Assembly: GCA_000708835.1 (NCBI GenBank)
Contig: DF237243.1
Span: 1-64,000, forward strand
Direction: 5' to 3'
DNA from: Klebsormidium nitens
Taxonomy: Eukaryota > Plantae > Klebsormidiophyceae
Length of the DNA stretch: 64,000 bases
The notes beneath the pieces were generated by a model that was given only the letters and a program-made list of their open reading frames with translations, was not told the origin of the DNA and did no database searches. Both the position numbers and the translations under genes were made by a program. Positions 1,438 to 22,607 of this stretch are shown one piece after another. Within the stretch, counting starts at the first letter, position 1. Each line of letters begins with the position of its first letter.

Positions 1438-4400
1438 ATGTCCAAACCCACACCAAACCCATCTAGCAAAATGGGCAAGAATGCGCCAGCGGCAGGCAAA
1501 CCTGTTGCTTGTGCAATGCAGGTGAAACCCTCGAAGCATCTCTTAAGCTGTCCGGCCTCAACGTCTCAGATCGCTCGAGTTGGTGCACAATCCGGAACCC
1601 CCAGGCCCCAAACCTCCATCAACAATGCCCCCCACTCCACACCCCCCAGCCGCGGCTGCCCCTGCTGACATCATCTCCCCCGCCCGTCAGACGGTACTAG
1701 CGGCGGAAGAAACAAACGCCAAGAATGGTCACGAGTACCTGGGGGCCCTGTCATTGAGCCATGGGTTCATGCCCAAGCGCGAGCCGCTCACAAGCCTGCC
1801 CCCCAAGTTCAAACAGTGGGATGAGCTTGTCACAAAGTTACCGGAGCTCCATGCCAAGATGGGCGCCCGGGCTTTCATGGATGCGATGCCGGTTCTAAAC
1901 GCTGAGAAGCTTCCGGATGAGTATGTGCACCGGGCAGGTGAGTGCAGCAGGAGCTTCCCTCCTCAAAAGTGCTGTCAACGAGCTTCCTCCTATGTTGTCC
2001 TTGTTTTCAGATACCGTGAACTCCAACAATTTGAAGCTGCTCTAATACATGTTGGGCCTCAGGTGTCTTCTTGTCTTCTCAACCTTTGCAGCTGTCCCTC
2101 CAGAGTTTCATTTTCCTTGTTGCACCTTTGGCTGCTTCCGTTGGTTCAAGAACGCAGAAGGGCTCCTGATCTCAACTCCTTTGTGGTTCTGAAGGACACG
2201 GCGTCAAGAGGAATGCCAAGACTGTCAGCAGGCATATACACAGTTTAAACCTGATCCACCTTTCTCATCCACACCAACTTTTCCCTTCAGCACTGGACCT
2301 CAGCATTAGTTTGCAGCCAGACCTCTTCCCGCAAACCTGATCAGGGCCTCACAATTCCTACAACGACGACTGCCAGTGAACTTCAAATACATCCTTTGAT
2401 TCTTGATGGCCTTCTCCCCAACCTTCCAGTGCTGGTCCTCGGCGTTGCCGCCATGTCGTACTACAACAACGGCGTGAAGCACTGCGGGGGCTACCTCCCG
2501 CCAGCAATCGACATTCCTTGGGGGGTCCTCTGTAGAAAGCTGCAGCGCAGGACCCAGCTCACATACTTTGACAACTCGCTGTACAACTGGGAGCAGCCTG
2601 TGCCCGAAGGGAAGTCCCCGGGGGGCGGAGAATACGATCCAGAGAAGCTGGTAGTCCACAAGCTGATCCGGAGCGTGTCAATCTCAGGCGCCAGGTGCGA
2701 AGAGATCTTTTTCATGACCATGGTGAGTGACGGCAGGAAGTATGACCTGATCAGGTTTTGCATGTACTCAGCCTGTTGCGTCTTTTCTGAGGAGTCAAAG
2801 ATAGTTCTTTCGATTAGGAAGGCACTTTCACATGATTTCTACTGCCCAGAGAACTGACGCTTTCAAGTTTGTACTTGTACAAGGGATATAAAGACAAACA
2901 AAGGCTCGATGTCTAGCACTAATATTCAACAAAGTTCGGCAGTCCCTTGCACCCAGCAACTTTCACAGAACATGCTTTCATCCGGTCTGGCTCAGCGGAC
3001 GTCTTTTAGAAAGTTTGCGTGCATGTCAAAGGAGCTGTCAAGTGTGGTAGACTCTAGTGAAGCTCGCAAAAGCTCCAACAAGGGCCCATAAAGCTGGGGT
3101 GGTATGTCTTTACGCTTATATCGAATCAACCACCTTTTCCACTTTCTGCAATTTCGCAGAAGCAGCAGTAGGGATCTAAGTTTGGGGAAGCCCCTATAAA
3201 GGTCCTCACACAACAGTCCCTATGTACATTTCTCTCCGTTCCCCTTTGTGCAGCTGTACACGATCTCCAGCAGCACCCCGATGGTCCGCTTCTGCTGCGA
3301 CATCCAGGACGCAATTCTGCGCGACGACCCTCCCGCGCTCAAGAAGGCGCTTGTGGGGTTGGGCGACGCCGTTTTGGCGATGACCAACGCGTTTGACGAA
3401 CTGTCCGCACTGCCCGAGTCGGACAGCTTCTCGGACCCGATCGAGTGGGCGCCCATGGGCAACGGGGTCATCGACCGGCGCTTTCCAGTTGCGGGTACGC
3501 GCGTTCGAGTTGTGACTCTCATGCCGTTTTGTACTTTGCTTCGCTTCTACGAGGTTGATGGCTTGTCTACGCAATGACATCAGGGGTGTGAAAGTTGCTC
3601 GATCAGATGAATGCGATGCTTTGAAGCAGTTTGAAAGGTGCTTTCCGTAGCGCTCCGAAAGGCTGGTTGAGTCGTACTCCGTCTGAAAGAGCCGATCCTT
3701 GCGAGGCTGCTCAATGTTCGACGATTTTCCCCCTTCCGCCAGTATAGGCTTTCTTGATTGGACACTCGTTCTTCAATTTGAGCCGCAGCGAAACAGGCCT
3801 TCAGCCAGCTGTCGGCCCATTCACGTACAATGCTCGCACCAATCATTTAAAATGCCGTGTTCACCTCAGGTGTGATCGGCGGCGGCACCCCGGTGCCCCA
3901 GGTTCTGGACGTTCTCTTCGAGCGCCGCAACTTCAAGCACGAAGTGAGCGCCATACAGAAGGAGCTGCTGACTGTGTGCCCGCCGCATTGGGTCGCCTTC
4001 TTCTCCGCGCTAGGCGAGGTCAGCCTGCCGGGCTACGTCAGGGCGTCTGGCGACAATGAGCTGAAGGGGCTGTTTGCGCGGGTGAGCTCTCCGAAGCCGA
4101 GAATACTGTTCTCGCAGTATTTGCTGGGTTAGCTAGAGAATAATGAAGATGCAAACGACAACCTGTTCAAATCCGCTAAGGCATGTTCCGTCTGACAAGA
4201 CTTGCAGATGCTGAGAGATGTTCTCAGCTTCCGGTCCAGACTCGTAGGGCAAGTATTGACCTATTTTGGGACGAAAAGGTGCGAAGATTTGGACGTCAGG
4301 CTCTTGAGTTTCGAGCGGGGAAACTGTCAAGCGATAATGGGTCGATGCTCTTAGCCCGCAGCGGAAGTCCTGAAGTTCGAATAAACATTTTTCAGTCGTT

Positions 4401-7400
4401 GGGACACGCGCCCCAATGTTTCGCATGTATTACCGCGCCAGTGGACACGTGCACTTGGTCTTGCAGGCGCTCATGCTCTACGCTGGGAAGGAGGGCTTCT
4501 TCGGCCGGCATATGCTGAAGATGTACGGATTCCTCAATAACACGTTCCGGTGCGGCCTGCGGGGTCAGACTACCGGAGGCCAAGCGCACTCCAGGGTGTG
4601 GTCCCACGCCCTGGGTGAGCAGACTTCTTGAAGGTATCGAATATTGAGAATCTTATGCTTCTGGAGGCTCATGCGCGGGAGAGTGGGATGCACTCTTTCG
4701 GCAAAGAGTGTATCAGGGCAAGATTTCCTATCTTCACGAGCTTCGCTCTGATCAGCGAATCTCACCCGAGCGCTCTTTCGACAATCCGGGTAAGAGGCGT
4801 CTTTCACTGATAAAGCACTTCGCTTATCTCGAATTGCTCCTTCCCGCAAAGCCGCTCCGGAAATGTTGGTTCAGCCAATATTGCAATCCATCTGCTCTTC
4901 CACCCACTTGCACTTCTGTCGAAATACGAGAAAGGTAACTGACGAGGTCTACAAGCTCAATCCTCAAAGTGTTCCAAGTAAGATCACCGTTCCGTTCCAC
5001 AACCACCTATACTATTTGCAGTCGAGCTGGAGAAGACGCGGCAGGAGCGCATCACGGAGTACCCGTCCGACGTGTCGAAAGCGGTGGCATACATCCACGC
5101 CAGTGACGAGAACGACGAGACGCCAAAGAGCGGGAAGCTGATTCACTTCGACATCAGCGGGAGCGGGCAGGTGTTTCGGGTGCGCTACAGGCCTGAATTT
5201 CAATCTCCTTCTTCTGCCTGCCCACTATTCAAGATAGATATTGTGCTTTCAAGTATCTAAACAGCCGAGCTGACAAGAATAGAACCTTTGTGGTCAGACT
5301 GTTCGCTTCGCCACCTTGAAATGCACTTAACAGAGCGGGCTGCGTAGCCTTCGCATCTTTGAACAGCTTTTCCGCTTTTCATCTTCGCAGCAACTACGTT
5401 TCTGTCCTTCAGTTCGCATCATCTTGGGACGAAGTCCCGACTCTACTTTCCCTCTTCTCGTCAGCCCCGCGTTCCGTTCTGCTTCCCTTTTGTATGCTAC
5501 CTTCATTCCAAATCCGCTCGTCTCAAACTTATAGGGACAGGCCATGGAGCACTGGTAGAGTGAAGAACGTCCAATTAGTGAATCTCCTAATGTGGTTGTA
5601 GACAAAATCAAGCTCGACATAAGTCCTGAAATGTCATTGAAGCTTCAGAGTACCCGTTGTATGTTCTCGCTGTCAAAGTTCTGAAGTAGAAACCCTAAAG
5701 CTTTTTTTTGTCAGGCGGGAGACCGTCTGATGGTCCTGCCCAAAAACGAGCACCGCATTGTCACGCTGACGATCAACTCGCTCGGGGCCTCGGCCGAGGA
5801 CATGGTTCCCCTGGACGCCACGTGGCGGCGCGCGCTCGCGGGGTTCGGCAAGTACCGCAGCAGGGAAGTCCTGGAAAAAGTACCGCTCTACGAGTTTCTG
5901 GAGCGAGCGCAGGTAAGCCGCAAACTCCGAGACAGAGTGGTGATTTTCGCGGACCTTGAGCGTCCGTAGAGATTTTGAGGTATATAGGAGCTGGTTTGTA
6001 AAGTTTGCAACTACTCCCAAATCTGCCCGATCAACCAATCCTTCTCGATCAACCCTTGCTCTTGTCTAGGTTGAAACTGCCTTCCGCCAAGCTCGTTCTG
6101 CAAAGCTGAGAGTGCTTGATTTGCCAGCGCTCTTATCTCACCTTAGTTCCAGTGGATCATTCGTCTCGGAAGTGGATCTCATCTTGACCGCTGTTCCGCA
6201 GTTCCGCCCGGTCTCCCTCAGGACTGCGCGCGCCTTGCTGGAGATCGCTCCTTCGGCTACACTGCAGACACTGGTGGATCGACACCTTGAGGAAAGTAGC
6301 TTAACTCACTTCTCGAACACTCTTTTTATTGCATACGTAGGTTCAGCCAATCTGTCCCTTCTGTTCGAACACCAGATAATAGAGCCGTTTCAGAAACGGC
6401 GCCACTCTTGAAAGGATCATGTCTCATGTCTGCGTTGAGGACTTTTCACTAATTATCCAATCTAGAAAGCAACCGACAATCCACTCAGGTCTATGGTTGC
6501 CGGGATGGGTCAAGTTGCAGACTTGTCTATCTTCACCACTGTCGCACGTGAGTTACATTCCAAGAGTTCGACTTAGACTGCTTCCTACGTGCTGAGTCGC
6601 TTTTCGTCCAATTTGCAAATATGGAAGCGGATTGTCCACGGGAAGCCCTCTTCACGCCTTGCCGAACGGAAGCAATGTGCAGATTCTACCCGACTCAGGA
6701 ACCTGCTCTCAGAGGCAGCCGTAAGCGCTGACGAAAGCAGTCTCCTCGTTTTTGCAGGCCCAGCTTGAATTTTGGGACCTCCTTATTGTTGCGGAGCTGT
6801 TCAACCCCGGGTTTGACGCGGTTGCCAAGGCAGACATGCTGACAGCAGACCCGGACAGCCCCTTCGCGCTCTGCAAAGTATTGGCCCCCGACTCTCCACG
6901 CCAGTACTCCATCGCTTGTGCCCCGGAGGAGGAGGGCAAACCAGCGAAGCAAATCTCTATCCTGGTGGGGGCTTGGAAGTGAGCACTCCTGACCCATATT
7001 CATCCCCTCAGAAAGATGAAGCACAATCTCTAAATCTGATTGTGTGGTTTGTTGGGCCTAAGGGGAGAGCCTAATCTATTGGTCTACTTGTAGCCGGGAA
7101 CGACATTCACCTGATTGTTCTTGTAGTCAGTCAGTCGTGACAAGTTTCTCAGTCGGGTCGCTTCCACCGTCACATTCTTCAATTTTCAGCACCTCCATCG
7201 GACAGGTGCTCTTGATACGCAGGTTGATTTATCACGCTAATACGCTTTCAACAAGAATGCATTCTCTTCCTGCGATTCTGAGAAATGAGGTGGGAGTTGG
7301 GGACGTGTGCACTTTGGATCCTCGACCCTTGGGAATTGAGCCTGCGAAAAGGAACCCACCTGAGCATGGCCCCTGTTAATACGTCAACACCGTTTCGAAA

Positions 7401-10400
7401 TGCAAGCTACGACAGACCCTCCGTTCACTCGGTTTTGTGCCTCAGATACACCACCAAGAACAGCACCAAGCTCACTCTTCCCCTTTTGAGCGACGAGGCC
7501 GCGGTCATCGAGCGCCGCGGGGTCGCCTCCACGTTCCTGCACAGTCAGACGATCACCCGGAGGGCCCTGGTAACAATACAAACCTAGCCTCTACCCGACA
7601 TCTGAGAAAAAGCAGTCAAAGCGGATCTATAACCGGATACAATCGACTATACACGCGATTGTGATAAATGATGGTGATTTTTCTAGGCAACCACGGAACT
7701 CTGGGTCCTTGTGCAATCGTAGACAAGGAAGGGACCCATACCGTAGCGTTTCGCCCTTCAATATTGTTCCGTTTTGCAGTCGGTACACGCACCGAGCCTG
7801 CTTTTATCCTTGCTTGAGCTTCGATTTCTATTCGAACTGAAATCGAACTTGAAACCGTTGCACTTTGACTTGTATAACCACTTCAGTGAACAATAAGCCC
7901 TCGACTCAACTGAAAACGCAACCCAAACCAAAGTCTCACGTTCTTCCCACTCGCACCCACCCTACATTCCCTAACAACCGCCCTAGCTCCGCTCCTCAAC
8001 ATTGGCTGGACTCATTGACGTTGCGTCGATAATCTATCTTATTACTTCTCAGGGGGCGGAGATATTCCGCAAGCTCGACACCGACGAAGACGGCCATCTG
8101 AGCCTGCCGGAGGTTGCGTACGGGCTGGAAGGCCTGGGCTTCTCCAAGGATTCCGCCGTGGAGCTGTTCCGGCGGGCGGACGCGGACCAGAACGGAAGCG
8201 TCAGCATCGACGAGTTTGCGGAGTCCATGGCGTTCATGTGGCTGGGGTGAGGAGCCCAGAAGTCAAGAATCTTGAGCATCCAGTCACATCTCCGGGAACT
8301 TCGCTCTGGTTAGGCTTTGCTTCAATCGAGGCCGAAAAGTAATAAGGACTGCAACACGCAATTCGATCCTGCGCTGACTTAGCTTCAGGTTGCACACAAG
8401 AACGTCCCCCACAGGCTTAGAACTGACTCAACCAAATTCACGTCGGTAGAAGAGGTTTGGTCTGGGCTCTTCTCGAAAGACCTAAGACGATCTCCGCATA
8501 TCTGGCAAGTAATGGATATTAGGGGCAAAGCACGCTGTTTGCTTCGTAGCTGGACCGTGCAGCACGGGAAGAGAACGGCTTGCCATTACTGCATCCCCGC
8601 CGGACGGTGCAAGGCGAGAAGAGGAATCTCTGACAAACCCACTCGTCAAAATCTCCCCCTCTGTCTGCCTGAAGAAGACGTAGTACGTCATTTCTAACAA
8701 CCCTCCCTGACACACTTATTTCGTCATCGCCGCTAAACTTCAACAATCAGACCAACAACGACGTAACACTGAAAATATGGTGATCCGTCGCAACGTGCAG
8801 GGACGAAGACGAGGATGATGGCACCGAAAAGGGCGACAGTCGGACCGAGAAGCACCCCGTGCAGGTCAGCGTGGTGTCGCCGCCCCGGTTCTGCCTCCCG
8901 GAAAACCCCGCCACCCCACTTGTCATGTTTGCCGGCGGAACTGGTGGGTGCTTCAGCTCGGAATCTACTTTGATATGGTATTAGACGGCATTTAAAAGTA
9001 CCCCTCAGAGTACCCTGTCAGACTTTTGCATTCGCGTTCTGAGCCAATTCCCGCTTTCTTTCCTCTGGCCTGTCCTGCAGCTTGCGGGTTCGCTTTGTTC
9101 TCTTCCTTCGGAAGTCTCAACCGTCCCAGCACCTGGTAAAGCTCCAAAACTTACTTTATAGGAGAGGGAGGTCATATACACCTTGTCTCCAACTCTACAT
9201 TGAATGAAGGGCCATGTTCCGCCAGGCCAGGTCTAGTCGATTACTTGTCGTCGTCATGCGAAGTAAGAAAGCCTGGCTGCCGTGACGTGGATAGTGATCC
9301 TCAAATGTTCAAGTAGGTAGATAGAGGATTTTATCCTTCAATTTCAGTAACAGCGTCTTCGAATCTTTCCCCGCCATGCATGAGTCAGCGGGCCTGCTCA
9401 GTGAGTTCAGACGATTCATGCCCTGCGCTCACAGACTTACTCAGTAGGCGCGACTCCCAGCCGTTCTGAGATCTCCGGCAGCTCGCTCTCAATCTCGGTT
9501 ACCTCCAATTCCTCTTTTTGTTTTCAGCTACTCGGCCACTTTGCGCAGGTTTCTTGGCAAATGAGCAATTCCGTTTTCGTCGTGGGCATCGCGACTTTCT
9601 GCGCGCTGGGCAGGCGCTCTCCGAGCGCGCAAAGCGCGTCACTGATGAGTCTTCAGGAATTTCTGAAACCTGGCCACTCGCGCGACTTTTTCGGCATAAC
9701 ATCGATTCCGTTTCCGCTGCAGGCATCGCGCCGTTCCGCGGCTTTTGGCAGGCGCTCGCTGCGCGCCCAAAACGCGCCATGGTGCTTTTGTACCTAAGCG
9801 TTCAAAGCGAGTCGCAGATGTTACTGCGGGAAGAGATGGAGCAGCTGCAGCGCGAGGGGAAGCTGACGGTGCGCGTCGCGCTGTCGCGGCAGGACAACGA
9901 CATGGTGTTCGACAAGACGGTCGGAAAGTGAGTGCGTTCAGGCTCTTCTAAGCTTTCTAAGTCGATGCAGTACTTTCAACACGAGAGCGGAAACGGAGAG
10001 GAAGTAAGTGAGGTAATAGAAAACTTGGAGCTGTAAGCAATAAAAACAGTTGAGCTTCGACACGACAGCTGCCGTAACTCCATGCGGAAGAGATGAGAGG
10101 AAGCAGGGAGGGTGATTTTACTCTGAACATGATTTCCGGGTCGTTGCGTAAAATCCTTTTTGATTGTGGATGGATTCTTTTACTTTGGAAACTCTCGGGT
10201 GCCGGCCAGGAACGCCGTCGAATCTTTCCGTCTTGGCCATATTCTATATGTACCTTGCTTTTCTGCATCATTTGTGAGCTTTATGGCGGCTTTCAACAAA
10301 TGTTTCGTTCCTTCAACGCTTCTCAGGTTCGTCCTGAAGCCCGGCAAGCGCCGGCGCATCGACGCACTCATGGAGAGCGAGTGGGACGCCGCGCTGCTAT

Positions 10401-13235
10401 ACCGGATCCTGCTTCCGGCGGAAAAGTCGGGGTTGGGCGGAACGCTGTACGTGTGCGGCCAGGCTGGTTTCACTAAGACGATCATGACGGCGCTCAAGAA
10501 TCTCATCAAACGCTTCCACATCGACATCCCCGGGTCGCTGGACCCCCATCCCGAGAGCGTGAGCAGCCCGCTCTAGTTGCTTTCGGCGGGAGGCGGCGCT
10601 TTGTGAATTGTATTCTAAAGCCGCTCTCGTTGTAAATGTTTGAGCAGTATGGTTCGAGCACCGGCCATTGTTCGAAAGCTGAAGTTATTGTTTGCCTTCT
10701 GACGCATAAGCTTTTGCTTGCGTGCTACTCCTCGTGGCTGACGTTTCTGACTGTTGGCGTCCAGCTCACTTTTATCTGCATATGATCAGCGGCCATATGA
10801 CTGCTTTGGGAATGCAGTAATCCCTTGTTATTTCTCCTTAATATGCAAAGTCGTGTGACAAATTGTTCGCCGTGAGCCAGAAGCCCCGAAAGCAGAAAGT
10901 CGCATTCTTTCATCCCTTTATTGCAGATTCTGTCCCGCCTGGTTGCCCAGCGCCGCCTCTGCCTGGAAGTTTTCACGTCGCACGCGGCCGCGGACCGCGC
11001 GGCGGAGGGGCGTACCTTCTGGCCGAGCGAGCTGTGCTTGCGCAATAATGACGTGGACGGCTGGTGGATGGCCATCGAGGCACGTGTGCTTGACGTCAGC
11101 GAGTTCCGGAACCTGCACCCCGGGGGGCCGCTCCTGACCGAGGGCTACTGCGGGTTCGACGCCACCGAGGTGGGCGGGTGACGTCGCTCTGCGCCCAATT
11201 CATGACGTCATGAACGTATGCAAAGCTGGAAGCCTCCAAAAATCAGCCTCTGAGAGCGAGAAAAAGCCATTGTCCCCCTGTTCGAAAGGAAGTTTGGCAT
11301 GCATTTGAGAGATGGCGCCGTTCTTCGGGAAACATTGGAAATAAGAACGGACAGGAGTTCCAGGGACCAAGCGCTCCGTCCACCATGGGAAGGAATCTGG
11401 CGCGCGAGCAGTCAAACATTTCTTCGCCCGGTCTTAAGGAACATCTCTTCTTGGAGAAGCAGTCCATCATCCGAAGCTAGCCCCAACTGCTGCCAAAGTG
11501 CTATTCGAAAGAGGCTCAAAAGTCAGTGTTTGATTCCTTCACTAAGATCACTGTTTGAGAGCACTTTTCAGTACAGGAAGGGAGGATCAAGATCGACGCC
11601 AACCTGTCAAAGCTTGAAGATTTTCTGCCATTTGTATTCTGAAACGGACGGTTCGGCTCCTCAGGCGTACTATGAAGTCGGACATCAGGCCGCGTCCGAA
11701 GTGCACTCCATGCTCGCGCTGTACGAGATCGGCAGGCTCCGCTGGATCGACCTGCCGCCCCCTCCGGAGGGGGATGCTTTTGCCGCCAATTTCACCCCCG
11801 TCTTGGTGCGCAAGTGGGTCGCGTTCCTTTTTAAAATGGCGGAGCTAGAGGGCATGTGCCGCGCGGCGTTCACCATGATGGACAAGGTGAGGGGGCGACA
11901 CGTGTACGGTAGGGAGAGCAAAGTAACGTCAACGCCCCTCATGAAGGCACTGGTCCCGGCTTTTTTCATGGAAGCAGAGAAGAGTCAGCAGAAGAGCGAC
12001 CCCAATTAGCGGCCTTCTTTCTCGTCCTTCTGTTGATCCTTTGTCGGTCCCGAAATTCTTATGCATTGTTGATCTGGCTTCTTGATTTGGGAAATGCATG
12101 GGGTTCAGACGCCTTCTAGCGACACTGAAAGGCACACAAGGAACATCACCCGACATAAGTGTTTAAAGCGTAACCGAGAGACGGTCGTTTTTGAAGAGGA
12201 TAGAAGCATTGGGCGACACTTATCGAACCTCTCGTCGTTTCCGCTTCCAGGAGCTCCAGAAGGCGCCCTCGCCCCAGGCCTACAACTACCTCCAAAACCT
12301 GCTGACGGTAAACAACATGGAGCTCAGTTGGCTGCCCATGATAGCCGGGGAAGACTGGGAGGCACTCCTCGCGAGCACCTTCGGCGCGGCCGCTCGCGCG
12401 CCGGCGGCGCCGGACGCGGGCGAACGCGCGAGCGCGGACGAGACGGTCGCGGCCGCGAGCGCCGCGGGCCTCGCCGACGCGCTCGCCGTCATCACAAAGA
12501 AGGCGGAGATCGACGGCTCGGAGGCCGGGAAGCTCCGGCAGGGCCTCCACGCGGCGCTCTCTGATCTGCTGACGGAGTCGACGCAAGGCGACACGGCGAA
12601 AGCGCCGACGGTCGCGAAGCAATGGGCGGCGATGCAGCGAATTAGGGCCGCTTCGCAGGAGCTGATGCGGGAGGCCAAGTTGGGCGTGCGGGACGTCGTG
12701 CGCAGCTTCGAGAACGTGAGTCCGGTGGTTTTGAACGATCGGACAGGAAATGGGAAAGGAACGCGTCTGTTCTTCGAACATCGTCCGGCCCTATTCTTTG
12801 TTCTGATCTGCTTCTGATCTTTGCTTCTGATCTGCTTCTTTGTTCTGATCAATCGCAATCACTTCGTGCATTTGCATTCGCGTCAGAATGTTGACAGAAG
12901 GAACTCGAGCGGAACGAGCGAGGGCGCAGATCTTTGCTACGTCCTTCTGTTGCAACGAGAGCAGAATCCCCATTTCGTGGGGGGCATCAGATCTCAGCCT
13001 TTTGCTAAGCAGCCTGCGTATCGGAGGAACCTTCCAATCAAGCGCTGAACGCCCGACCTCGCTTACTTTGCAGTTGTCGACGCTGAGCAAGCCGCAGGAG
13101 GTGCTAGCCGCGTACAACAATCTGCCGCTCAAGATTGCCGGGTACTGCGCGGCCGTCCCGAGGGCGGTTCAGAAGTACACGAACACAGTCACGGCGGTCG
13201 CCCTCGCGCTGCCGCATTTCAAGGCGGCCAATTGA
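1438..13235 (+). CDS. Multidomain heme/flavoprotein: IDO-family dioxygenase domain + FAD-binding + EF-hand pair + NAD(P)H-binding (FNR/CPR-type) + cytochrome b5 + unknown C-terminal region (~1,263 aa, 18 exons)
   Basis: Exons: 1438-1521, 1691-1937, 2430-2722, 3254-3494, 3870-4081, 4467-4614, 5022-5179, 5715-5912, 6758-6978, 7446-7569, 8053-8246, 8801-8943, 9723-9927, 10327-10558, 10927-11169, 11665-11886, 12251-12715, 13074-13235. All introns are GT-AG with matching phases; total 3,792 nt, one frame, ending TGA. IDO motifs: HGFMP...PLTSLPPKFKQWDELVTKLPEL, LPPAIDIPW, LTYFDNSLYNW, FFGRHMLK, TTGG. Reductase motifs: AGDRLMVLPKN, PRQYSIA, RRGVASTFL, F-LPENP...MFAGGTGIAPFRGF, LYVCGQ, LEVF. Cytochrome b5 motifs: HPGG...DATE...VGH. 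The first exon and start codon are less certain; an acceptor-like site at 1430 suggests a 5'UTR intron. Confidence 0.9.
1691..4614 (+). other. IDO/PrnB-superfamily heme domain (exons 2-6 of the fusion gene)
   Basis: The translated exons align by eye with the IDO family: N-terminal GFxP-x-PL-x-LP-x-F-x-W, YNW, E-x-x-FF, the DP helix, the LD-x-L-F-x-R turn, P-x-HW/R, the putative proximal heme His (CAT at 4509-4511 in GRHMLK) and a GTGG-like loop (TTGG). Confidence 0.85.
8053..8246 (+). other. Paired canonical EF-hand Ca2+-binding loops inserted in the reductase
   Basis: Loops DTDEDGHLSLPE and DADQNGSVSIDE both fit D-x-D-x-D/N-G-x-h-x-x-x-E, each preceded by an F-R-K/R helix. They are encoded on one exon between the FAD-binding exons and the GGTG NAD(P)H-binding exon. 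Confidence 0.9.
10990..11735 (+). other. Cytochrome b5-like heme-binding domain (spans exons 15-16)
   Basis: RTFWPSEL...NN...WWMAIEARVLDVSEFRNLHPGG...YCGFDATE|AYYEVGH...ML..YEIGRL matches the b5 fold. Both axial His residues are present (11116-11118 and 11683-11685). Confidence 0.9.
12794..12850. repeat. Short (TTCTGATC)-based tandem repeat in intron 17 of the fusion gene
   Basis: ttctttgttctgatctgcttctgatctttgcttctgatctgcttctttgttctgatc. Confidence 0.75.
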
Positions 13236-17252: not shown

Positions 17253-20200
17253 TCAAGTCTCTCCCGCTGACTCCGGTTTCTTCCGGATGGGCCTCCACAG
17301 GTTCGCCACCCAGGGAGCGAATTCGAAATTGTCTGGGTCGCGAGCGTGCGTCTTGTAGTAGTCCGACCAGTCACACCGGTTCTCTGACGTCAGCACCCCC
17401 CCCCGGCTGGAGTCGTACACGCACAGCGGCAGCCAGTCGTCGCCCCCGTTCATGCGCCGCTTGCGCTCCCGGGGGTACGCGAGCGGGGCCTGGATATACC
17501 TGCTGGGGGAGGGCGATGACGTCATTGCAACGGTGACGGCGACTGTATTAGGTGGGACTACAAAAGGCAGTATCTCCGACTGAGGGGGCCCATCTCGCCT
17601 GCGTTTCCGTGCTGTTTCCCAGAAGAGTGAATTTCAGGTATCTTTTAGGGTAAAGAATCATTTGAGGAAGTCCGTCGGAACACATCGCGGCCTGAAGCAA
17701 GCTAAGTGGTGGCAAGAACGTCATTTACGCGTTCGGTGTCGAAGAGTGCGGGGTCGAAGAGAAGATTGATTTTGCAAAATGGAGACTGAGGGTTCTGTCA
17801 ACATCGATAAGACGACGAGATACAGCGACATAATCCTGCTTTGGGCATTGTCTGACCACAGCGAAACTGACCACAAAAGTTCCAACCTCCGAAAGGCAAA
17901 CCTTGCCACGCAACAAAGATCGACAAGGTCCCCACTGATGGCCCAAGGGTTACCAACTCAACAAGATCCCGCTCGGACAGAATCCTGAGCTATCCGCACC
18001 TGACTCCGTCGAGCGTCATGTCCCAGCTGAAATGCGTATGCCCAAATAAGTGGCAACCCGGAGCGCCCGCCGCGTGGATGGCTCGCACGCGCGCCTCGAG
18101 CGCGTGCGACCCAACGGCCTTTGCGAGGTTGGGGTAGAAGAGGAAGCGCTTCTCGGGAATCAGCTCCAACCTGCGGAAGACGGAAGAACCTTTAGGGCTC
18201 AGAGCGCGCAAGACTACACGGGTCAAATCGGGGACCGTTGTAACAGGCTTAGCCTTTTTAGCCAGGAGACTCCGCCGAGTAGATTCGTGAAGCCAAACTC
18301 CTTCATTTATAACGTTCAGAATCTTCGTCTCACTTCCGCCACCGCCCTCAACGAATTCCCTTCCAGACCTGATTCCAACAAAAATCGAAACCCCCTTCGC
18401 TTCAAACCGTCCCTCTTTACCCTTGCCCAGAGCCCTTGTCCTTCGCTTTCTCAAACACAATCTGTACAGAAGCAATGGAAGATATTTCGAGACCGCATAC
18501 CTTGGGAGGAAGTGTGAGAACGTGATGACGTGGCACCCCGGGTTGGAGGTCGGGTCGAAACCCCGGTGCAGCTCGTGGTTCATCTCGTCGAACGCGCGTG
18601 CCACGGATTCGGTCCGGGCGTCCCAACCGGCGGGCCACTTGCAGACTTTGTGGTCTTTCGCTACCTGCGGAAGAGAAGAACGGCTAGGTCAGCACGGAAA
18701 CTTGCCGACGTCGTCGGATTTGAATGAGGTTTCCCCTCTGCTGTTTTGCAGAGAGGATAGAGGGTCAGTTTCGACAACCCGCGCAGCAAAGAGCATATTC
18801 ACACCTGTTATCAGCAGGGTAGTAGAGAGCCAAACGCGAATACCCCAGGGATAAGGCGGATCGGCAACAAAAGGCCGTTGCGAGATTCGCGTGGGGAAAT
18901 GCCTGCAACCTATGACGTACCTTATAGATGATGCGAAGCTCAAACTACAAAGAGCAGCGGACTCTTTTCCCTACGGTATATAGTGGCCGAATTTCGGTAA
19001 GTCAGATCTAGGCAGAAATGTCCGGACACGTGTCAGATTTTCCACCTTAGAGATTCGCCTACATGTTGAAAGGAACAACTTAACGAGTAAACTACCTGTC
19101 ATAATCTTAAGCCAAAGAACAATTTCTCAAACCATAGCAATAAAAGAATCATGCTCAACGGGGTTTCGTCGTCAAATGTTGGTAATCGGGCTCCATGATC
19201 AAGCCAGCTGTCAAAATGCAGAATCAGTCCTTACCTTTTCAATAGGGGGGATGTTGTAACCCGGAATGTCGGGCTCGGTATCAAAGCTTATATGGTGCCA
19301 AGAAAGAATCGGCACCACCCACACCCCGTGCTCCTCTTCCGCTACTCCGCTGTCTCGGCCGGAACTCCCCTTGGAGACGGACCCCCCCGGACCATCCCCT
19401 CCCCCTTGTGTCCCACTTTCTCCCCCCCTGCTTCTGCTCTTTTCCTCGCTGGTTCCGGCTCCGCCCCCCCTAGTTCCGCACGCATCTGCCCGAGCTCCGT
19501 TCTCTTCCGTCCGGGTTTGGTTTTCCCCCCATCTTATCCCGTTCTCGGTTTCCCTTCTTCCGATTCCACCCTCTCCGAAACCGCCCGTTTGGGAGCTTAC
19601 CCACTCCTCGGCACTCGTCAATCGCTCGTCGACGCTCGACAGCGGTTCTGCAACTCGCGCTTCCGTCGTTCGCCCCTCGGTTTCGGCACAGGCACCGTTC
19701 GATCCGGCCCCTGGAGCGGATCGCTGCGGTTCTCTTCTACCTGTCAAAGACGGTCGGACATTCCCCTCGACCGGCTCCGCACAGTTTGCTACCCGCTCCG
19801 GGATTCCAGCTTCCGGGTTACGCTCCTGCTCGTCGACCTGACTATGCGTGCTAGCAACACTCTTAAGATTATCTACACTCGCAGAAATGCCTGCATCAAT
19901 ATCTGCCCGCTCAGAAAGTCCAGTCGAACCGCACCCACCGGGCTCTTTCCGCTGGCTATTTACAATTGCCTGCTGCCCGCTTACTCCGCCATTGACGGGA
20001 CCTCTCCCCAGCGCCGGCTCCTGTAGAACTTTTTCCTTACTTGCTTCCCCGCAGTTCTCTGAAGCACTGCCGCCCTTTCTGGTCTGACCTGACTTTTCCT
20101 CCGGTTTCAGAAACTTGGGCCGCGTGTCGATCCCCAGATCCTGACAGATCTTGAAGAGCACTGCGAGCTTGCTCAGCGAGTTTTCCGGGGGGGCACTTGC

Positions 20201-22173
20201 ATCTACTCCCAATACAGCGCCGGACGCAGGCTCAGGAGACCTTCCGGACACCGCTTCTGTTGCTCGGGCTGTGTCCGAAACCGTACGAGATAAGTCGCGA
20301 GGACTGGGCTCTGACGCGTTAGCCGAGGCCGTTTCAGAGTTGCCTTCAGGCTTGAAGTCGACTCCGTCGCCAGTCCGGGGGGTAGAGTTGTTCTCGGGAT
20401 TCGTCTCGGAACCGGCTTTAGTTTCGGGTTTGGCAACGGATTCTGCAGCGGGTTGTGAAACGGGAGCCTTGTTTGAGCGAAGCCAGAGGTCGTGATTCCC
20501 CGGGGTGAAGAACACGTGGGCGAACTTGGGCCGGAGGATGCGGAATGTTTCCTCGAAGATGGAGACGTCATCGCTGATGTCACCCGCCACTATGAGCGCG
20601 TCGTTGAGGAAGGAGGTCGGAGACAGGTCCCGGATCCAGTCTAAGTTTTCCTCATGGTCAGTGTGAATGTCCGAGATCAGGTACACCTACAAAGGAGAAC
20701 AAGAACTTCTGATTGAGTTGGGTGTCGAACATTTCTGGAGGCTTGTTGACCAGCTCGTGTGAGACTGGGCTTTACAAAGAGCGACTTGGGAAGACTTGTG
20801 CGTTTGTCATCTGTTAGAGCGCAGAATTTCCCGTAGTATCGGACGGTTTGTTCCAAGGGTATTGTGACTACGTTGATAAAAGACTTCAGAAGCCCTTAGT
20901 TTCTCGGATCAAACGACTTGCTTGACAAACTCTGAGTACTGAAATTGAAAGATCGAATGGGATGCATGCGAAATAATCAGTACACAGAGACATTCCTGAG
21001 AAACCATACGAAGCGGAGTGGAACACTTGCCCGTGGTGGACTGAACCCAATGGAAAGCCTTCCCACAAATAGAATGCTTATCAATGCTAGATTGGCAGGG
21101 TTCAGAAACTCTCACTGCGGCTAAACCGCCATCCCAAGAAGAGAAAAGCACGCACTATTCCGACACTACAGCCAACAAACGCACTGTCAGATAGCTGAGA
21201 CACTGAGCCAGATTGTATGTACTGAACTCACCCTCATTGCGCCCGGTGCACTCTCGTGCTTTCTAGGTGCCGGAACTGCAGGGAGGAAACGCCGCCCCCT
21301 GCCAGGGCCTTTCTCGCTTGTCACTGGCTCTGCGCTATTGCGAATGGCGCCAGTGCCAGCAGAGGCGGCCGAAAGAAGTTCCTTCACCAAGCCGGTCCTG
21401 TGGACGCACGATTGAGAATGTTATGTCTTATTCCTTTGCATTTGACACCGGTGCGACTGTTGTGCCCATTGAGATGTCCAAGCGTACACGATGGTGTCAA
21501 GCCGCAGATCGCAAATGGGCCTCGCAGACCCAAACGACTGCCTTCTGAAGAATCCATTCCAGAAAATGCGGTTTGGATTCAATGCTCTACGATGCGCCAC
21601 CCATGAGGTTTACTTGGGGGAATCGCATCAAAGTGGTTTCATCCAGGAATCCGCAACAAGTCATCAATGGGGCCAACACATTGGATCACTGCACCTGTCA
21701 GTATAAAATTCTTGGGGAGACTACTTTCAGAGCGATCTAATGCATGTACTACAGAGGTTACTGGAAGAAGTAAGTTCCGCCGTATGAGTGCCACTTTGAT
21801 TGGTGTAAAGGGTCTGATATGCCTTCGCCTCTTGGAGGTTTGCTGCCAAATATACGGTGCCATTGCAAAGGCTGCTGCATGTATCCTGCTCGATACGTGT
21901 GCCTTTGAAAAACAGGCCCTCACAGGATGTATATTCAGACTAAATCCTGGCAATAACTCCAAATTCACTGGGATCTCACCCTGACTGGCTGAATGCCCGG
22001 CTTTGGAGATGCTCCAGAATCCCCTGTGACTGCTTCCGCCGACCGCTGCTTTGGCAAAATGCAGGTCTTTGCTGGGCCGCCAATGTCAATTCAAACTGGC
22101 ACAGAGAACGCCCAGAGGTTCGAAGCTTTGAAGGCAATCTACAAGGGACAGAAACGGAGCGTGTCAACACCAT
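17253..22173 (-). CDS. Calcineurin-like metallophosphoesterase of the plant PptH (ACP phosphodiesterase)-like family, with N-terminal transit-peptide-like extension (~797 aa, 6 exons)
   Basis: Exons 22173-21980, 21397-21232, 20686-19235, 18664-18501, 18170-18000, 17499-17253; total 2,394 nt, phases consistent. Metal-binding motifs: SDIH, AGDI, PGNHD, FSHFLP, FGHTH. Family motifs: SWHHISFDTEPDI, DHKVCKWP, ELIPEKRFLFYPNL, YIQAPLAYPRER. Confidence 0.88.
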
Positions 22174-22607
22174 GCCGCTGAGGGCTGCATGCGAGGGGAG
22201 GCATCACGCATCGAGTCTGTCGTCTGTCGCCGTCGGAGCCAAGACTTCTCAGAGTTCTCTGAAACTGAATCTGAGACTAAGGTTTGAAAGCTTGGCCAAT
22301 CTGGACTGGGACTCGGAAGTAAATGGCAATGGATGGGGGGCCCAAACGTATGGTAGAGAGTGGTAACTGTTATTAGTGGAAACGTATTCCCTTCTTTCTA
22401 GTTCTCAGAGTCAGGGATTGAAGTTTTTGCTAGCGATCAGGCGCGGCTGGGTGGTGGCGGCTGTTTCAATGCCAATGGAGCGGCCTTGCAAGGGCAGTCG
22501 GGCGGGCCTGGTCCTCCTTAGAACTTCTAGAAGAGCAACAGCAGACGTATCTAGGTTACAGTAGAATCAATACTTGTTGAATGCTCATCATTGTGCGGCA
22601 GCCGCCC

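What the first reader, a model, noticed from the sequence alone, without database searches (positions are those of the whole stretch)
8053..8870. Ca2+-sensing EF-hand pair inserted between the FAD- and NAD(P)H-binding halves of the reductase
Seen: two textbook 12-residue EF loops sit on a dedicated exon just after RRGVASTFL, followed by an acidic linker (DEDEDDGTEKGD) before the FxLP...GGTG strand. Established: Ca2+ control of flavoprotein electron flow occurs through N-terminal EF-hands in RBOH/NOX5/DUOX and through calmodulin in NOS, but not normally through an insertion inside the FNR module. Inference: a built-in Ca2+ switch gating heme reduction, which could link calcium signalling to an oxygenase product. 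The 194-nt exon cannot be skipped in frame.
Basis: partly seen in the sequence, partly recalled or inferred. Interest (0 to 1): 0.75.

Follow-up and report, generated by a model that had tools for sequence, protein, structure and literature searches.

The report
Calcium-sensor module inside an algal reductase
In the green alga Klebsormidium nitens, a large enzyme that joins a haem dioxygenase to its own electron-supply chain carries a calmodulin-like calcium-binding module spliced into a surface loop of its flavin reductase; the module is in the mature mRNA and is absent from every fungal relative checked, so calcium may control this enzyme directly, though that is untested.

Summary
Window 8053-8246 (+) is a 194-nt exon encoding two canonical 12-residue EF loops. 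These are the only two PROSITE EF-loop matches in all six frames of the 64-kb window. Pfam EF-hand_7 scores 4.7e-11.

Spliced contigs from four public runs (four studies) join 7569>8053 and 8246>8801 at the same depth as the flanking exons. No exon-skipping joint was listed.

The gene is an IDO-like haem dioxygenase, then a CPR/SiR-type FAD/NADPH reductase without an FMN domain, then cytochrome b5. NCBI annotates it in Klebsormidium nitens as a 1281-aa product with Pfam hits to IDO, EF-hand_7, NAD_binding_1 and Cyt-b5.

It is a 30-43 % identical homologue of a widespread fungal IDO-reductase-b5 family of about 1600 aa. Its exons map colinearly onto a profile of 66 fungal members, except the EF exon, which falls between profile positions 773 and 777. 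The spacer from the GxxS-FL motif to FxLP is 24-35 residues in fungi and 104 here. The acidic stretch is ancestral to that loop, not a new linker.

Strictly, the insert sits inside the FAD subdomain, before its last strand. Calcium gating of electron flow is plausible but untested. No paper describing it was found. The joined spliced protein was neither searched nor folded. Another note from this scan covers the whole gene.

The parts
1625..13235 (+). Whole gene: IDO-like haem dioxygenase, then FAD/NADPH reductase with an EF-hand insert, then cytochrome b5, then an unassigned tail. 18 exons totalling 1287 codons in my model. The NCBI annotation gives a 1281-aa product.
   Evidence: Exon-by-exon Pfam. 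Colinear mapping on the fungal family profile. NCBI-annotated product with precomputed Pfam IDO, EF-hand_7, NAD_binding_1 and Cyt-b5. Junctions from 4614 to 10927 are supported by RNA contigs. Junctions upstream of 4467 and downstream of 11169 are predicted only.
1625..4614 (+). Five predicted IDO-domain exons (1625-1937, 2430-2722, 3254-3494, 3870-4081, 4467-4614). The last one carries the proximal-His motif GFFGRHMLKMYGF.
   Evidence: Pfam IDO 2e-9 and 7.7e-8 on the first two exons. All five match the fungal profile colinearly. The join of the 4614 end to 5022 is seen as a loose end in all four runs (table 7).
6758..6978 (+). Exon carrying the FAD-binding motif P-R-Q-Y-S-I-A (RxYS).
   Evidence: Sequence. 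Aligns to the fungal 'vPrtYsis' motif. Joints 6291>6758 and 6978>7446 appear in four runs.
7446..7569 (+). Exon carrying the FAD pyrophosphate motif R-R-G-V-A-S-T-F-L (GxxS/T), followed by 10 residues leading into the insert.
   Evidence: Aligns to fungal 'aGvssgfl', profile positions 747-773. Joints.
7570..8052 (+). Phase-0 GT..AG intron upstream of the EF exon.
   Evidence: Low-depth contigs (7-13x against 250-310x in X1) retain it, consistent with pre-mRNA.
8053..8246 (+). EF-hand-pair exon (194 nt).
   Evidence: Pfam EF-hand_7 4.7e-11. Two PS00018 matches. AlphaFold2 single-sequence model with pLDDT 75.5 and helix-loop-helix x2 topology with paired short strands. Foldseek top hits are calmodulin lobes, centrin and ALG-2, probability 1.00, TM 0.55-0.70. 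No counterpart in the fungal profile.
8077..8112 (+). EF loop 1: DTDEDGHLSLPE (ligand positions 1, 3, 5, 12 = D, D, D, E; Gly at 6; Leu at 8).
8179..8214 (+). EF loop 2: DADQNGSVSIDE (ligand positions 1, 3, 5, 12 = D, D, N, E; Gly at 6; Val at 8).
8247..8800 (+). Phase-2 GT..AG intron downstream of the EF exon.
8801..8943 (+). Exon with the acidic stretch DEDEDDGTEKGD (8802-8837), the last strand of the FAD barrel (VQVSVV), FCLP, and the start of the NADPH-binding strand and glycine motif (VMFAGGTG).
   Evidence: Matches fungal profile positions 777-812, E 1.4e-5. Weak match to E. coli SiR-FP 1DDG residues 205-237.
9723..9927 (+). NAD(P)H-binding exon (IAPFRGFW ... ALSRQD).
   Evidence: Pfam NAD_binding_1 3.4e-7. 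PDB hits to P450 BM3-type and CPR reductases, 1e-4 to 1e-2. Fungal profile 4.8e-15.
10327..10558 (+). Exon with the LYVCG motif of the NADPH subdomain.
   Evidence: Fungal profile positions 891-940, E 2.6e-6.
10927..11886 (+). Two exons (10927-11169 and 11665-11886). They hold the end of the reductase (RRLCLEVF, with the C-terminal aromatic) and the cytochrome b5 domain (HPGG ... second His in YYEVGH).
   Evidence: Pfam Cyt-b5 5.8e-8. Fungal profile positions 953-1059.

Best explanation
Shown: the exon is real and is included in the main assembled mRNA form. It encodes a calmodulin/centrin-like pair of canonical EF-hands. The pair was inserted, relative to the fungal members of the family, into the surface loop between the GxxS/T helix and the last beta-strand of the FAD-binding subdomain of a CPR/sulfite-reductase-type FAD/NADPH module. 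That module sits in one Klebsormidium nitens polypeptide between an IDO-type haem dioxygenase domain and a cytochrome b5 domain. There is no FMN domain. All cofactor motifs are intact: the proximal His of the IDO domain, RxYS, GxxS, GGTGIAPF, SR for the 2'-phosphate, CG, the C-terminal Phe, and the two b5 histidines.

Inferred: electrons run from NADPH to FAD to the b5 haem to the IDO haem. The EF pair binds Ca2+ and, like the cis EF-hands of NOX5/RBOH or calmodulin in NOS, changes conformation. This would switch inter-domain electron transfer on or off, for example by docking on, or releasing, another part of the same protein so that b5 can reach the FAD. A cytosolic Ca2+ rise would then be converted into reduction, and so activation, of the dioxygenase haem.
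For: Both EF loops are canonical, and they are the only two such matches in the window. The Pfam EF-hand hits are strong. The predicted fold matches Ca2+-sensor EF lobes. The exon is present in spliced contigs of four runs from four studies, at the depth of its neighbours, with no skipping joint listed. The exon cannot be skipped in frame (194 nt). The public annotation gives a 1281-aa product with IDO, EF-hand_7, NAD_binding_1 and Cyt-b5. The exons map colinearly on a 66-member fungal profile, with the EF exon unmatched between profile positions 773 and 777. The spacer is 24-35 aa in 90 fungal homologues and 104 aa here. None of the 120 listed homologues has an EF-hand Pfam hit. In a fungal homologue model the insertion site is a coil of roughly 24 residues with moderate confidence, between a short helix and a strand, so it is a permissive surface loop. 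Cytochrome b5 has been proposed as a physiological reductant of IDO enzymes (PMC4191572, read), which fits the fused b5.
Against: Ca2+ binding and any Ca2+ dependence of activity are untested. I could not obtain 3D coordinates. By general FNR topology (my recollection, not computed), the loop after the GxxS helix lies away from the isoalloxazine edge, so direct steric gating is not obvious. No orthologue from another alga could be retrieved, so conservation of the insert, a proxy for function, is unknown. Contig data cannot exclude minor isoforms. The substrate and product of the IDO-like domain are unknown, even for the fungal family.
Confidence: 0.45

Rival explanations
1. The EF pair is a tolerated or structural insertion. 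It folds and may bind Ca2+ constitutively, or not at all, in a permissive surface loop. It does not regulate electron transfer, and enzyme activity is independent of Ca2+.
For: The site is a variable-length loop (24-35 aa) of only moderate model confidence in homologues. The insert is absent from every listed fungal homologue, so it is not needed for catalysis. Earlier notes of this scan (unchecked) report several other enzyme-EF-hand fusions in this genome, so EF-hand shuffling may simply be frequent in this lineage.
Against: Both loops keep every canonical ligand position, which decays quickly without selection. The exon is retained in the main mRNA form of an expressed gene.
Confidence: 0.3
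2. The EF pair is a Ca2+ sensor, but it acts outward. It would mediate Ca2+-dependent dimerisation, membrane or partner binding, or localisation of the enzyme, rather than gating intramolecular electron flow.
For: The exiting helix of EF-hand 2 is hydrophobic and Met/Phe/Trp-rich (FAESMAFMWL), like the target-binding surfaces of calmodulin-type lobes (fold matches). By FNR topology (recollection) the loop may be far from the flavin edge.
Against: No partner or targeting signal was identified. Cis EF-hands in other flavohaem enzymes (NOX5, RBOH) act on the enzyme's own dehydrogenase domain.
Confidence: 0.2
3. The exon is an annotation or assembly artefact, or a rarely used cassette exon absent from the main mRNA.
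For: None found. The only caveats are that contigs drop rare variants and that the four runs are labelled RNA only by guess.
Against: Nine consecutive spliced joints, including both joints flanking the EF exon, appear in all four runs. Single contigs span exons 6758 to 10558 and beyond, including the EF exon. The 543 contig letters between the 7446-7568 and 10327-10558 pieces equal 194+143+206. Skipping would frameshift. The NCBI gene model includes EF-hand hits.
Confidence: 0.03

Closest known systems
Fungal IDO / FAD_binding_1 / NAD_binding_1 / Cyt-b5 fusion proteins, about 1500-1700 aa. They are annotated 'NADPH--hemoprotein reductase', 'sulfite reductase flavoprotein alpha-component' or 'related to nitric-oxide synthase'. 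Examples are Fusarium oxysporum FOXG_12094 and the Serendipita indica protein P0243.
   Same: The domain order is the same and the homology is colinear across the IDO, FAD, NADPH and b5 parts, at 30-43 % identity per exon. Both lack an FMN domain. Both have an acidic loop at the insertion site.
   Different: None of the 120 listed fungal members has an EF-hand Pfam hit. Their loop is 24-35 aa against 104 aa here. The fungal tail after b5 is longer and is not detectably similar to the algal tail. I found no paper characterising the fungal family either.
NOX5 / plant RBOH / DUOX (EF-hand-regulated NADPH oxidases)
   Same: EF-hands lie in the same polypeptide as an FNR-superfamily NADPH/FAD dehydrogenase that feeds a haem. 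Ca2+ binding activates electron flow by an intramolecular interaction.
   Different: In those enzymes the EF-hands form a separate N-terminal (or, in DUOX, an intervening cytosolic) domain, not an insert within the FAD subdomain. Their haems sit in a six-helix membrane domain. Their FAD subdomain is the short ferric-reductase type, not the CPR type with a connecting domain. Here the protein shows no ferric-reductase membrane domain and the acceptor is b5, then an IDO haem.
Nitric oxide synthase
   Same: A haem oxygenase domain lies N-terminal to a CPR-type FAD/NADPH module in one chain, and Ca2+ controls haem reduction.
   Different: NOS uses calmodulin in trans on a linker and an FMN domain as the shuttle. 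Here the sensor is built in, it lies inside the FAD subdomain, the shuttle is cytochrome b5, and the haem domain is of IDO type, not NOS type.
Ca2+-dependent external type-II NAD(P)H dehydrogenases (plant NDB1/2, Neurospora NDE1); from my own knowledge, not tested here
   Same: An EF-hand motif is inserted internally in a flavin dehydrogenase and makes activity Ca2+-dependent.
   Different: The fold is unrelated (a two-dinucleotide-binding-domain flavoprotein), the acceptor is quinone, and there are no haem domains.
Nitrate reductase / NCB5OR (cytochrome b5 fused to an FNR-type reductase)
   Same: Electron transfer goes from FAD to b5 haem within one chain.
   Different: Those enzymes use the short cytochrome-b5-reductase-type FAD_binding_6 module, have no EF-hands and have no IDO domain.

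Membership tests
EF-hand pair (Pfam PF13499 / PROSITE PS00018) | Two helix-loop-helix motifs with 12-residue loops, recognised by the family profiles | tested here: met
   EF-hand_7 4.7e-11 and EF-hand_1 8e-12 with two stretches, on the exon alone.
EF-hand pair (Pfam PF13499 / PROSITE PS00018) | Canonical Ca2+ ligands at loop positions 1, 3, 5 and 12, Gly at 6, hydrophobic residue at 8 | tested here: met
   D,D,D,E and D,D,N,E, with Gly6 and L8/V8. Both loops match PS00018, and there are only two matches in about 128,000 six-frame residues.
EF-hand pair (Pfam PF13499 / PROSITE PS00018) | Four-helix EF-lobe fold with a short beta-bridge between the two loops | tested here: met
   The AF2 model has pLDDT 75.5 and elements H-E-H-H-E-H. 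Foldseek finds calmodulin, centrin and ALG-2 lobes with TM 0.55-0.70 and probability 1.00, with E-values only about 1e-3 because the domain is short.
EF-hand pair (Pfam PF13499 / PROSITE PS00018) | Measured Ca2+ binding and a Ca2+-induced conformational change | not testable with these tools
   Needs ITC, 45Ca overlay or NMR on the protein.
CPR / sulfite-reductase-type FAD/NADPH module (FAD_binding_1 + NAD_binding_1) | RxYS and GxxS/T FAD motifs, GxGxxP NADPH motif, CG motif, C-terminal aromatic residue | tested here: met
   PRQYSIA, GVASTFL, GGTGIAPF, LYVCG and EVF are seen in the exon translations and align to the family consensus.
CPR / sulfite-reductase-type FAD/NADPH module (FAD_binding_1 + NAD_binding_1) | Profile match to NAD_binding_1 and FAD_binding_1 | tested here: inconclusive
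   NAD_binding_1 scores 3.4e-7 on exon 9725-9925. FAD_binding_1 does not hit any single exon, and the joined protein was not searched. However, the exons map colinearly on fungal homologues whose FAD_binding_1 hits are significant, and the profile of those homologues hits SiR-FP, CPR and NOS reductase at 1e-23 to 1e-20.
Diflavin reductase (CPR, NOS reductase, SiR-FP, MSR) | N-terminal flavodoxin-like FMN domain | tested here: not met
   There is no Flavodoxin_1 hit in any exon, in the annotated product's Pfam list or in fungal homologues. A b5 domain takes the place of the one-electron shuttle.
NOX5 / RBOH / DUOX | Six-helix ferric-reductase haem domain with N-terminal EF-hand domain | tested here: not met
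   The Pfam list of the annotated product is IDO, EF-hand, NAD_binding_1 and Cyt-b5 only. The EF pair is internal.
Nitric oxide synthase | NO_synthase oxygenase domain, calmodulin-binding linker, FMN domain | tested here: not met
   The haem domain hits IDO, not NO_synthase. There is no FMN domain. For contrast, a true NOS (locus L016) shows NO_synthase + Flavodoxin_1 + FAD_binding_1 + NAD_binding_1.
IDO-reductase-b5 fusion family (fungal type) | Colinear IDO, FAD_binding_1, NAD_binding_1 and Cyt-b5 homology along one protein | tested here: met
   13 of the 18 exons hit the 66-member profile in colinear order, with E-values from 5e-15 to 0.1. The EF exon is the exception within the conserved span. 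Exon 5024-5179 gave only a non-colinear chance hit, and exon 6202-6291 and the two tail exons gave no hit.

The most novel reading that the evidence does not exclude
This is the first self-contained, Ca2+-switched IDO-type haem dioxygenase. A cytosolic Ca2+ spike would be read by an EF-hand pair built into the FAD subdomain. That would license NADPH > FAD > b5 > IDO-haem electron transfer, turning calcium signals directly into a tryptophan- or indole-derived oxidation product in a streptophyte alga close to the origin of land plants. It would also be the first case of Ca2+ control exerted from inside an FNR-type fold.
Probability: 0.3. Interest if true: 0.8.

Novelty: new variant of a known kind. 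Interest (0 to 1): 0.6.

Why it matters
Ca2+ control of flavoprotein-to-haem electron transfer is known from NOX5/RBOH/DUOX, which use terminal EF-hand domains, and from NOS, which uses calmodulin in trans. An EF-hand pair grafted into a loop of the FAD-binding subdomain would be a third, structurally different solution. It would also be a natural test of which surfaces of the FNR fold can transmit regulation.

The host protein is itself an uncharacterised, widespread fusion of an IDO-type haem enzyme with a complete NADPH-FAD-b5 electron supply. [quoted passage not shown]

The algal version, with its apparent built-in sensor, offers an easy on/off handle for biochemistry. It also offers a possible link between Ca2+ signalling and tryptophan-derived metabolites in a close algal relative of land plants.

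Tried and rejected
1. A representative-library search with the EF exon alone returned only multi-EF-hand proteins whose summed scores swamp the list. Five candidates of suitable length were all plain EF-hand repeat proteins.

2. The search for homologous proteins with the 87-aa stop-free stretch around the EF exon found nothing. The length filter keeps out the full-length protein.

3. A MAFFT alignment of the separate exon translations to a fungal homologue (A1) scattered most exons and was not used. A local profile search, exon by exon, replaced it.

4. Exact look-ups of the 1100-codon open frame at 22581-25883, tried to reach the annotated record, were not on record. The neighbouring ORF 19214-20686(-) worked instead.

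5. Synteny in a related species was tried through locus L019 (Logan, run SRR23617307). The contig ends just after the neighbouring gene, so the orthologous position is not covered.

6. An ESM Atlas feature search with a fungal reductase-b5 segment gave scores of 0.82 or less and no cluster listing an EF-hand family (at most three families are shown per cluster). It did show one IDO/NAD_binding_1/Cyt-b5 cluster of 1127 aa labelled bacterial.

7. PDB searches with the two short flanking exons alone gave only weak or chance hits.

8. Nine literature searches found no paper on an EF-hand inside a CPR/FNR-type module or on IDO-reductase-b5 fusions.

9. As a result the K. nitens protein itself, its cluster members and algal orthologues could not be retrieved, and the full protein was not modelled.

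10. Considered and rejected: a cassette or artefactual exon (refuted), and membership of the NOX or NOS families (defining domains absent).
Full report
**1. Observation**

The window is eukaryotic and intron-rich. On the + strand, exon 8053-8246 (194 nt) translates to a 64-residue stretch plus a split Gly codon. It holds two 12-residue loops:
- DTDEDGHLSLPE at nt 8077-8112
- DADQNGSVSIDE at nt 8179-8214

Both loops satisfy PROSITE PS00018. They are the only two matches in all six frames of the 64-kb window, about 128,000 residues, and they lie 34 residues apart. Pfam on this exon alone gives EF-hand_1 at 8e-12 with two stretches, and EF-hand_7 at 4.7e-11.

A single-sequence AlphaFold2 model of the exon has pLDDT 75.5. 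Its order of elements is helix, strand, helix, helix, strand, helix, which is that of an EF lobe. Its best structural matches are calmodulin lobes, centrin and ALG-2, with probability 1.00 and TM 0.55-0.70.

The preceding exon, 7446-7569, ends ...RRGVASTFLHSQTITRRAL. The following exon, 8801-8943, reads (G)DEDEDDGTEKGD...VQVSVVSPPRFCLPENPATPLVMFAGGT(G).

**2. Is the exon in the mRNA?**

The 24 public runs found are labelled RNA only by guess. I laid four of them, from four studies and two species labels, on 5000-10990. All four contain contigs with nine consecutive joints:
- 5179>5715
- 5912>6202
- 6291>6758
- 6978>7446
- 7569>8053
- 8246>8801
- 8943>9723
- 9927>10327
- 10558>10927

That shows these are spliced RNA.

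In X10, one 2372-nt contig places 7446-7568 at its letters 224-346 and 10327-10558 at letters 890-1121. The 543 letters between equal 194+143+206, which are the EF exon and the two exons after it as laid. X9 has an equivalent 1614-nt contig. Contigs that carry the EF exon have the same depth as those carrying its neighbours (174-310x).

Only low-depth contigs (2-14x) cross the introns, consistent with pre-mRNA. No 7569>8801 joint was listed. Contigs can hide rare isoforms, so minor skipping is not excluded. Skipping would shift the frame, because 194 = 3x64+2.

**3. What the gene is**

Exon by exon, Pfam finds:
- IDO on 1625-1936 and 2432-2722 (2e-9 and 7.7e-8)
- NAD_binding_1 on 9725-9925 (3.4e-7)
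- Cyt-b5 on 10927-11169 (5.8e-8)

The neighbouring ORF 19214-20686(-) is 99 % identical to KFL_002940030 of Klebsormidium nitens, which fixes the organism. The NCBI record DF237243.1 (assembly GCA_000708835.1) annotates our gene as a 1281-residue product. Its precomputed Pfam families are IDO, EF-hand_7 (plus fainter EF-hand models), NAD_binding_1 and Cyt-b5. My RNA-supported exon lengths sum to 1287 codons. There is no flavodoxin/FMN domain.

**4. Relatives, and proof that the EF pair is an insertion**

A metagenome scan with exon 9725-9925 returned 17 loci. Seven of them (L001-L004 and L007-L009) are 56-99 % identical to listed fungal proteins. L006 is the source of the query itself (P0151, 100 %). 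Pfam on L003, L006, L007 and L009 shows FAD_binding_1 + NAD_binding_1 + Cyt-b5. In L006, L007 and L009 an IDO-bearing open frame lies just upstream.

One such natural ORF (L006, P0151) retrieved 417 homologues. The 120 listed are fungal wherever a source names the organism (Ascomycota and Basidiomycota). Full-length members are about 1500-1700 aa, and their Pfam list is IDO + FAD_binding_1 + NAD_binding_1 + Cyt-b5. None has an EF-hand hit.

I built a local profile from 66 full-length fungal members and searched each window exon separately. The exons hit in colinear order:

| Exon | Profile positions |
|---|---|
| 1625-1936 (IDO) | 98-182 |
| 2432-2722 (IDO) | 237-270 |
| 3254-3493 (IDO) | 320-373 |
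| 3872-4081 (IDO) | 395-457 |
| 4467-4613 (IDO) | 464-508 |
| 5715-5912 | 580-625 |
| 6758-6976 | 711-731 |
| 7447-7569 | 747-773 |
| 8802-8942 | 777-812 |
| 9725-9925 | 815-878 (E 4.8e-15) |
| 10328-10558 | 891-940 |
| 10927-11169 | 953-1032 |
| 11665-11886 | 1035-1059 |

The EF exon has no colinear match. Its only hit is a non-colinear chance match at E 3.1. So the insert lies between profile positions 773 and 777.

The spacer from the end of the GxxS-x-FL motif to FxLP is 24-35 residues in the 90 fungal proteins my pattern caught. In the window it is 10 + 65 + 29 = 104 residues.

The fungal loops are themselves D/E-rich, for example ...SEDIESDDE... and ...DNDDDNDDDDN....

A profile of 34 fungal reductase-b5 segments hits E. 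coli SiR-FP, CPR and nNOS reductase at 1e-23 to 1e-20, and cytochrome b5 at about 1e-15. In SiR-FP (1DDG) the equivalent loop has only about nine residues.

In an AlphaFold2 model of a Serendipita segment, the site is a coil of about 24 residues between a short helix (226-229) and a strand (254-260). Its 10-residue block pLDDT values are 68-79, lower than much of the module, where many blocks reach 85-93. That is what a permissive surface loop looks like. The tool returns no coordinates, so I could not measure distances to the flavin or to b5.

**5. Where exactly the insert sits**

The insert is not at the boundary between the two halves. It lies inside the FAD-binding subdomain, after the pyrophosphate-binding GxxS/T helix and before the last barrel strand (VQVSVV), which leads into FCLP and the NADPH glycine motif.

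The cofactor motifs are all intact:
- the proximal His of the IDO domain (GFFGRHMLKMYGF, against fungal GfmGtHrykvyG)
- PRQYSIA
- GVASTFL
- GGTGIAPF
- ALSRQD, where the Ser-Arg suggests NADPH (inference from CPR)
- LYVCG
- EVF
- HPGG, plus the second b5 His

**6. Mechanism**

Shown so far: an expressed polypeptide with a haem dioxygenase, an FAD/NADPH reductase, a b5 domain and a canonical EF pair.

Inferred: electrons flow NADPH > FAD > b5 haem > IDO haem. Cytochrome b5 has been proposed as a physiological IDO reductant (PMC4191572). Ca2+ binding to the EF pair would alter an intramolecular contact that controls b5 access or flavin reactivity, by analogy with NOX5/RBOH and with calmodulin-NOS.

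I put about 0.75 on Ca2+ binding and about 0.45 on Ca2+ control of catalysis. The rivals are a structural or neutral insertion (0.3) and a Ca2+-dependent interaction directed outward, such as dimerisation, partner binding or localisation (0.2). An artefact or a minor cassette exon is essentially excluded.

**7. Comparison and novelty**

The protein works like NOX5 or NOS, in that Ca2+ would control NADPH-to-haem electron flow. It is a member of neither family, because their defining domains are absent.

It is a member of the fungal-type IDO-reductase-b5 fusion family and differs from the listed members by the insert. I know of internal EF-hand inserts in type-II NAD(P)H dehydrogenases (my own knowledge), but of none inside a CPR/FNR-type fold. 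Nine literature searches found none, and found no paper on the IDO-reductase-b5 fusions.

The domain combination is visible in public annotation, so the sequence itself is not new. The architecture and its implication appear undescribed. My verdict is a new variant of a known kind.

**8. Limits**

The joined protein was not assembled, searched, looked up or folded. For that reason I could not retrieve the K. nitens protein's database entry or any algal orthologue, so whether the insert is conserved beyond K. nitens is open.

Junctions upstream of 4467 and downstream of 11169 are predicted, not read-supported.

Earlier notes of this scan (unchecked AI notes) report other enzyme-EF-hand fusions in this genome. 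I did not test them. A first-reader note on the whole gene (s1-267506) gives the same domain order, which my tests confirm.

Noticed in passing
window 6292-6757: This is a non-canonical intron. All four RNA runs join 6289-6292 to 6756-6759, with three ambiguous letters. None of the four possible cuts is GT..AG or GC..AG. The only cut with an AG acceptor is GA..AG. The other eight introns laid are GT..AG.
   Followed up: partly
L003, L006, L007, L009 and proteins P0151-P0270: There is a large, apparently uncharacterised fungal family (Ascomycota and Basidiomycota, about 1500-1700 aa) that fuses IDO, an FMN-less CPR-type FAD/NADPH reductase and cytochrome b5. It is annotated only as 'NADPH--hemoprotein reductase', 'sulfite reductase flavoprotein' or 'related to NOS'. 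It is a natural fusion supporting b5 as the IDO reductant.
   Followed up: partly
ESM Atlas cluster seen (no locus): A cluster of 87 members, about 1127 aa, has Cyt-b5 + IDO + NAD_binding_1 and is labelled Bacteria (Actinomycetota; phylum known for only 4 members). If that label is correct, the fusion is not confined to eukaryotes. This bears on how a streptophyte alga came to share it with fungi.
   Followed up: no
window 11887-13232 (exons 12251-12715 and 13074-13232, plus the second half of 11665-11886): The C-terminal tail of about 250 residues after the b5 domain is Ala-rich and has no significant Pfam hit. It has no detectable similarity to the longer fungal tail. It includes a basic amphipathic stretch (..KQWAAMQRIRAASQELMREAKL..) that could be a docking helix for the EF pair; this is speculation.
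   Followed up: no
window 1625-13235 against NCBI DF237243.1: The annotated product has 1281 residues, while the exon lengths supported here sum to 1287 codons. The six-codon difference may lie at the non-canonical intron or in the unverified 5' exons.
   Followed up: no
window 17990-20686 (-): The neighbouring gene is KFL_002940030, a calcineurin-like metallophosphoesterase of 797 aa. Its catalytic motifs are split by a low-complexity insert of about 350 residues, rich in Ser, Gly and Glu, within one 491-codon exon. A 57 % identical relative exists in a Logan assembly (P0272, run SRR23617307).
   Followed up: partly
window 22581-25883 (+): This is an 1100-codon open frame, rich in Gly, Glu, Ser and Arg and of low complexity. 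No gene with exactly this product, or with the product starting at the second Met, is on record.
   Followed up: partly
window 7541-8081, 7742-8081, 9076-9751 and other intron spans: Low-depth contigs (2-14x against 170-310x for spliced contigs) run through introns in all four runs. This suggests a few per cent of unspliced or intron-retaining transcripts.
   Followed up: no
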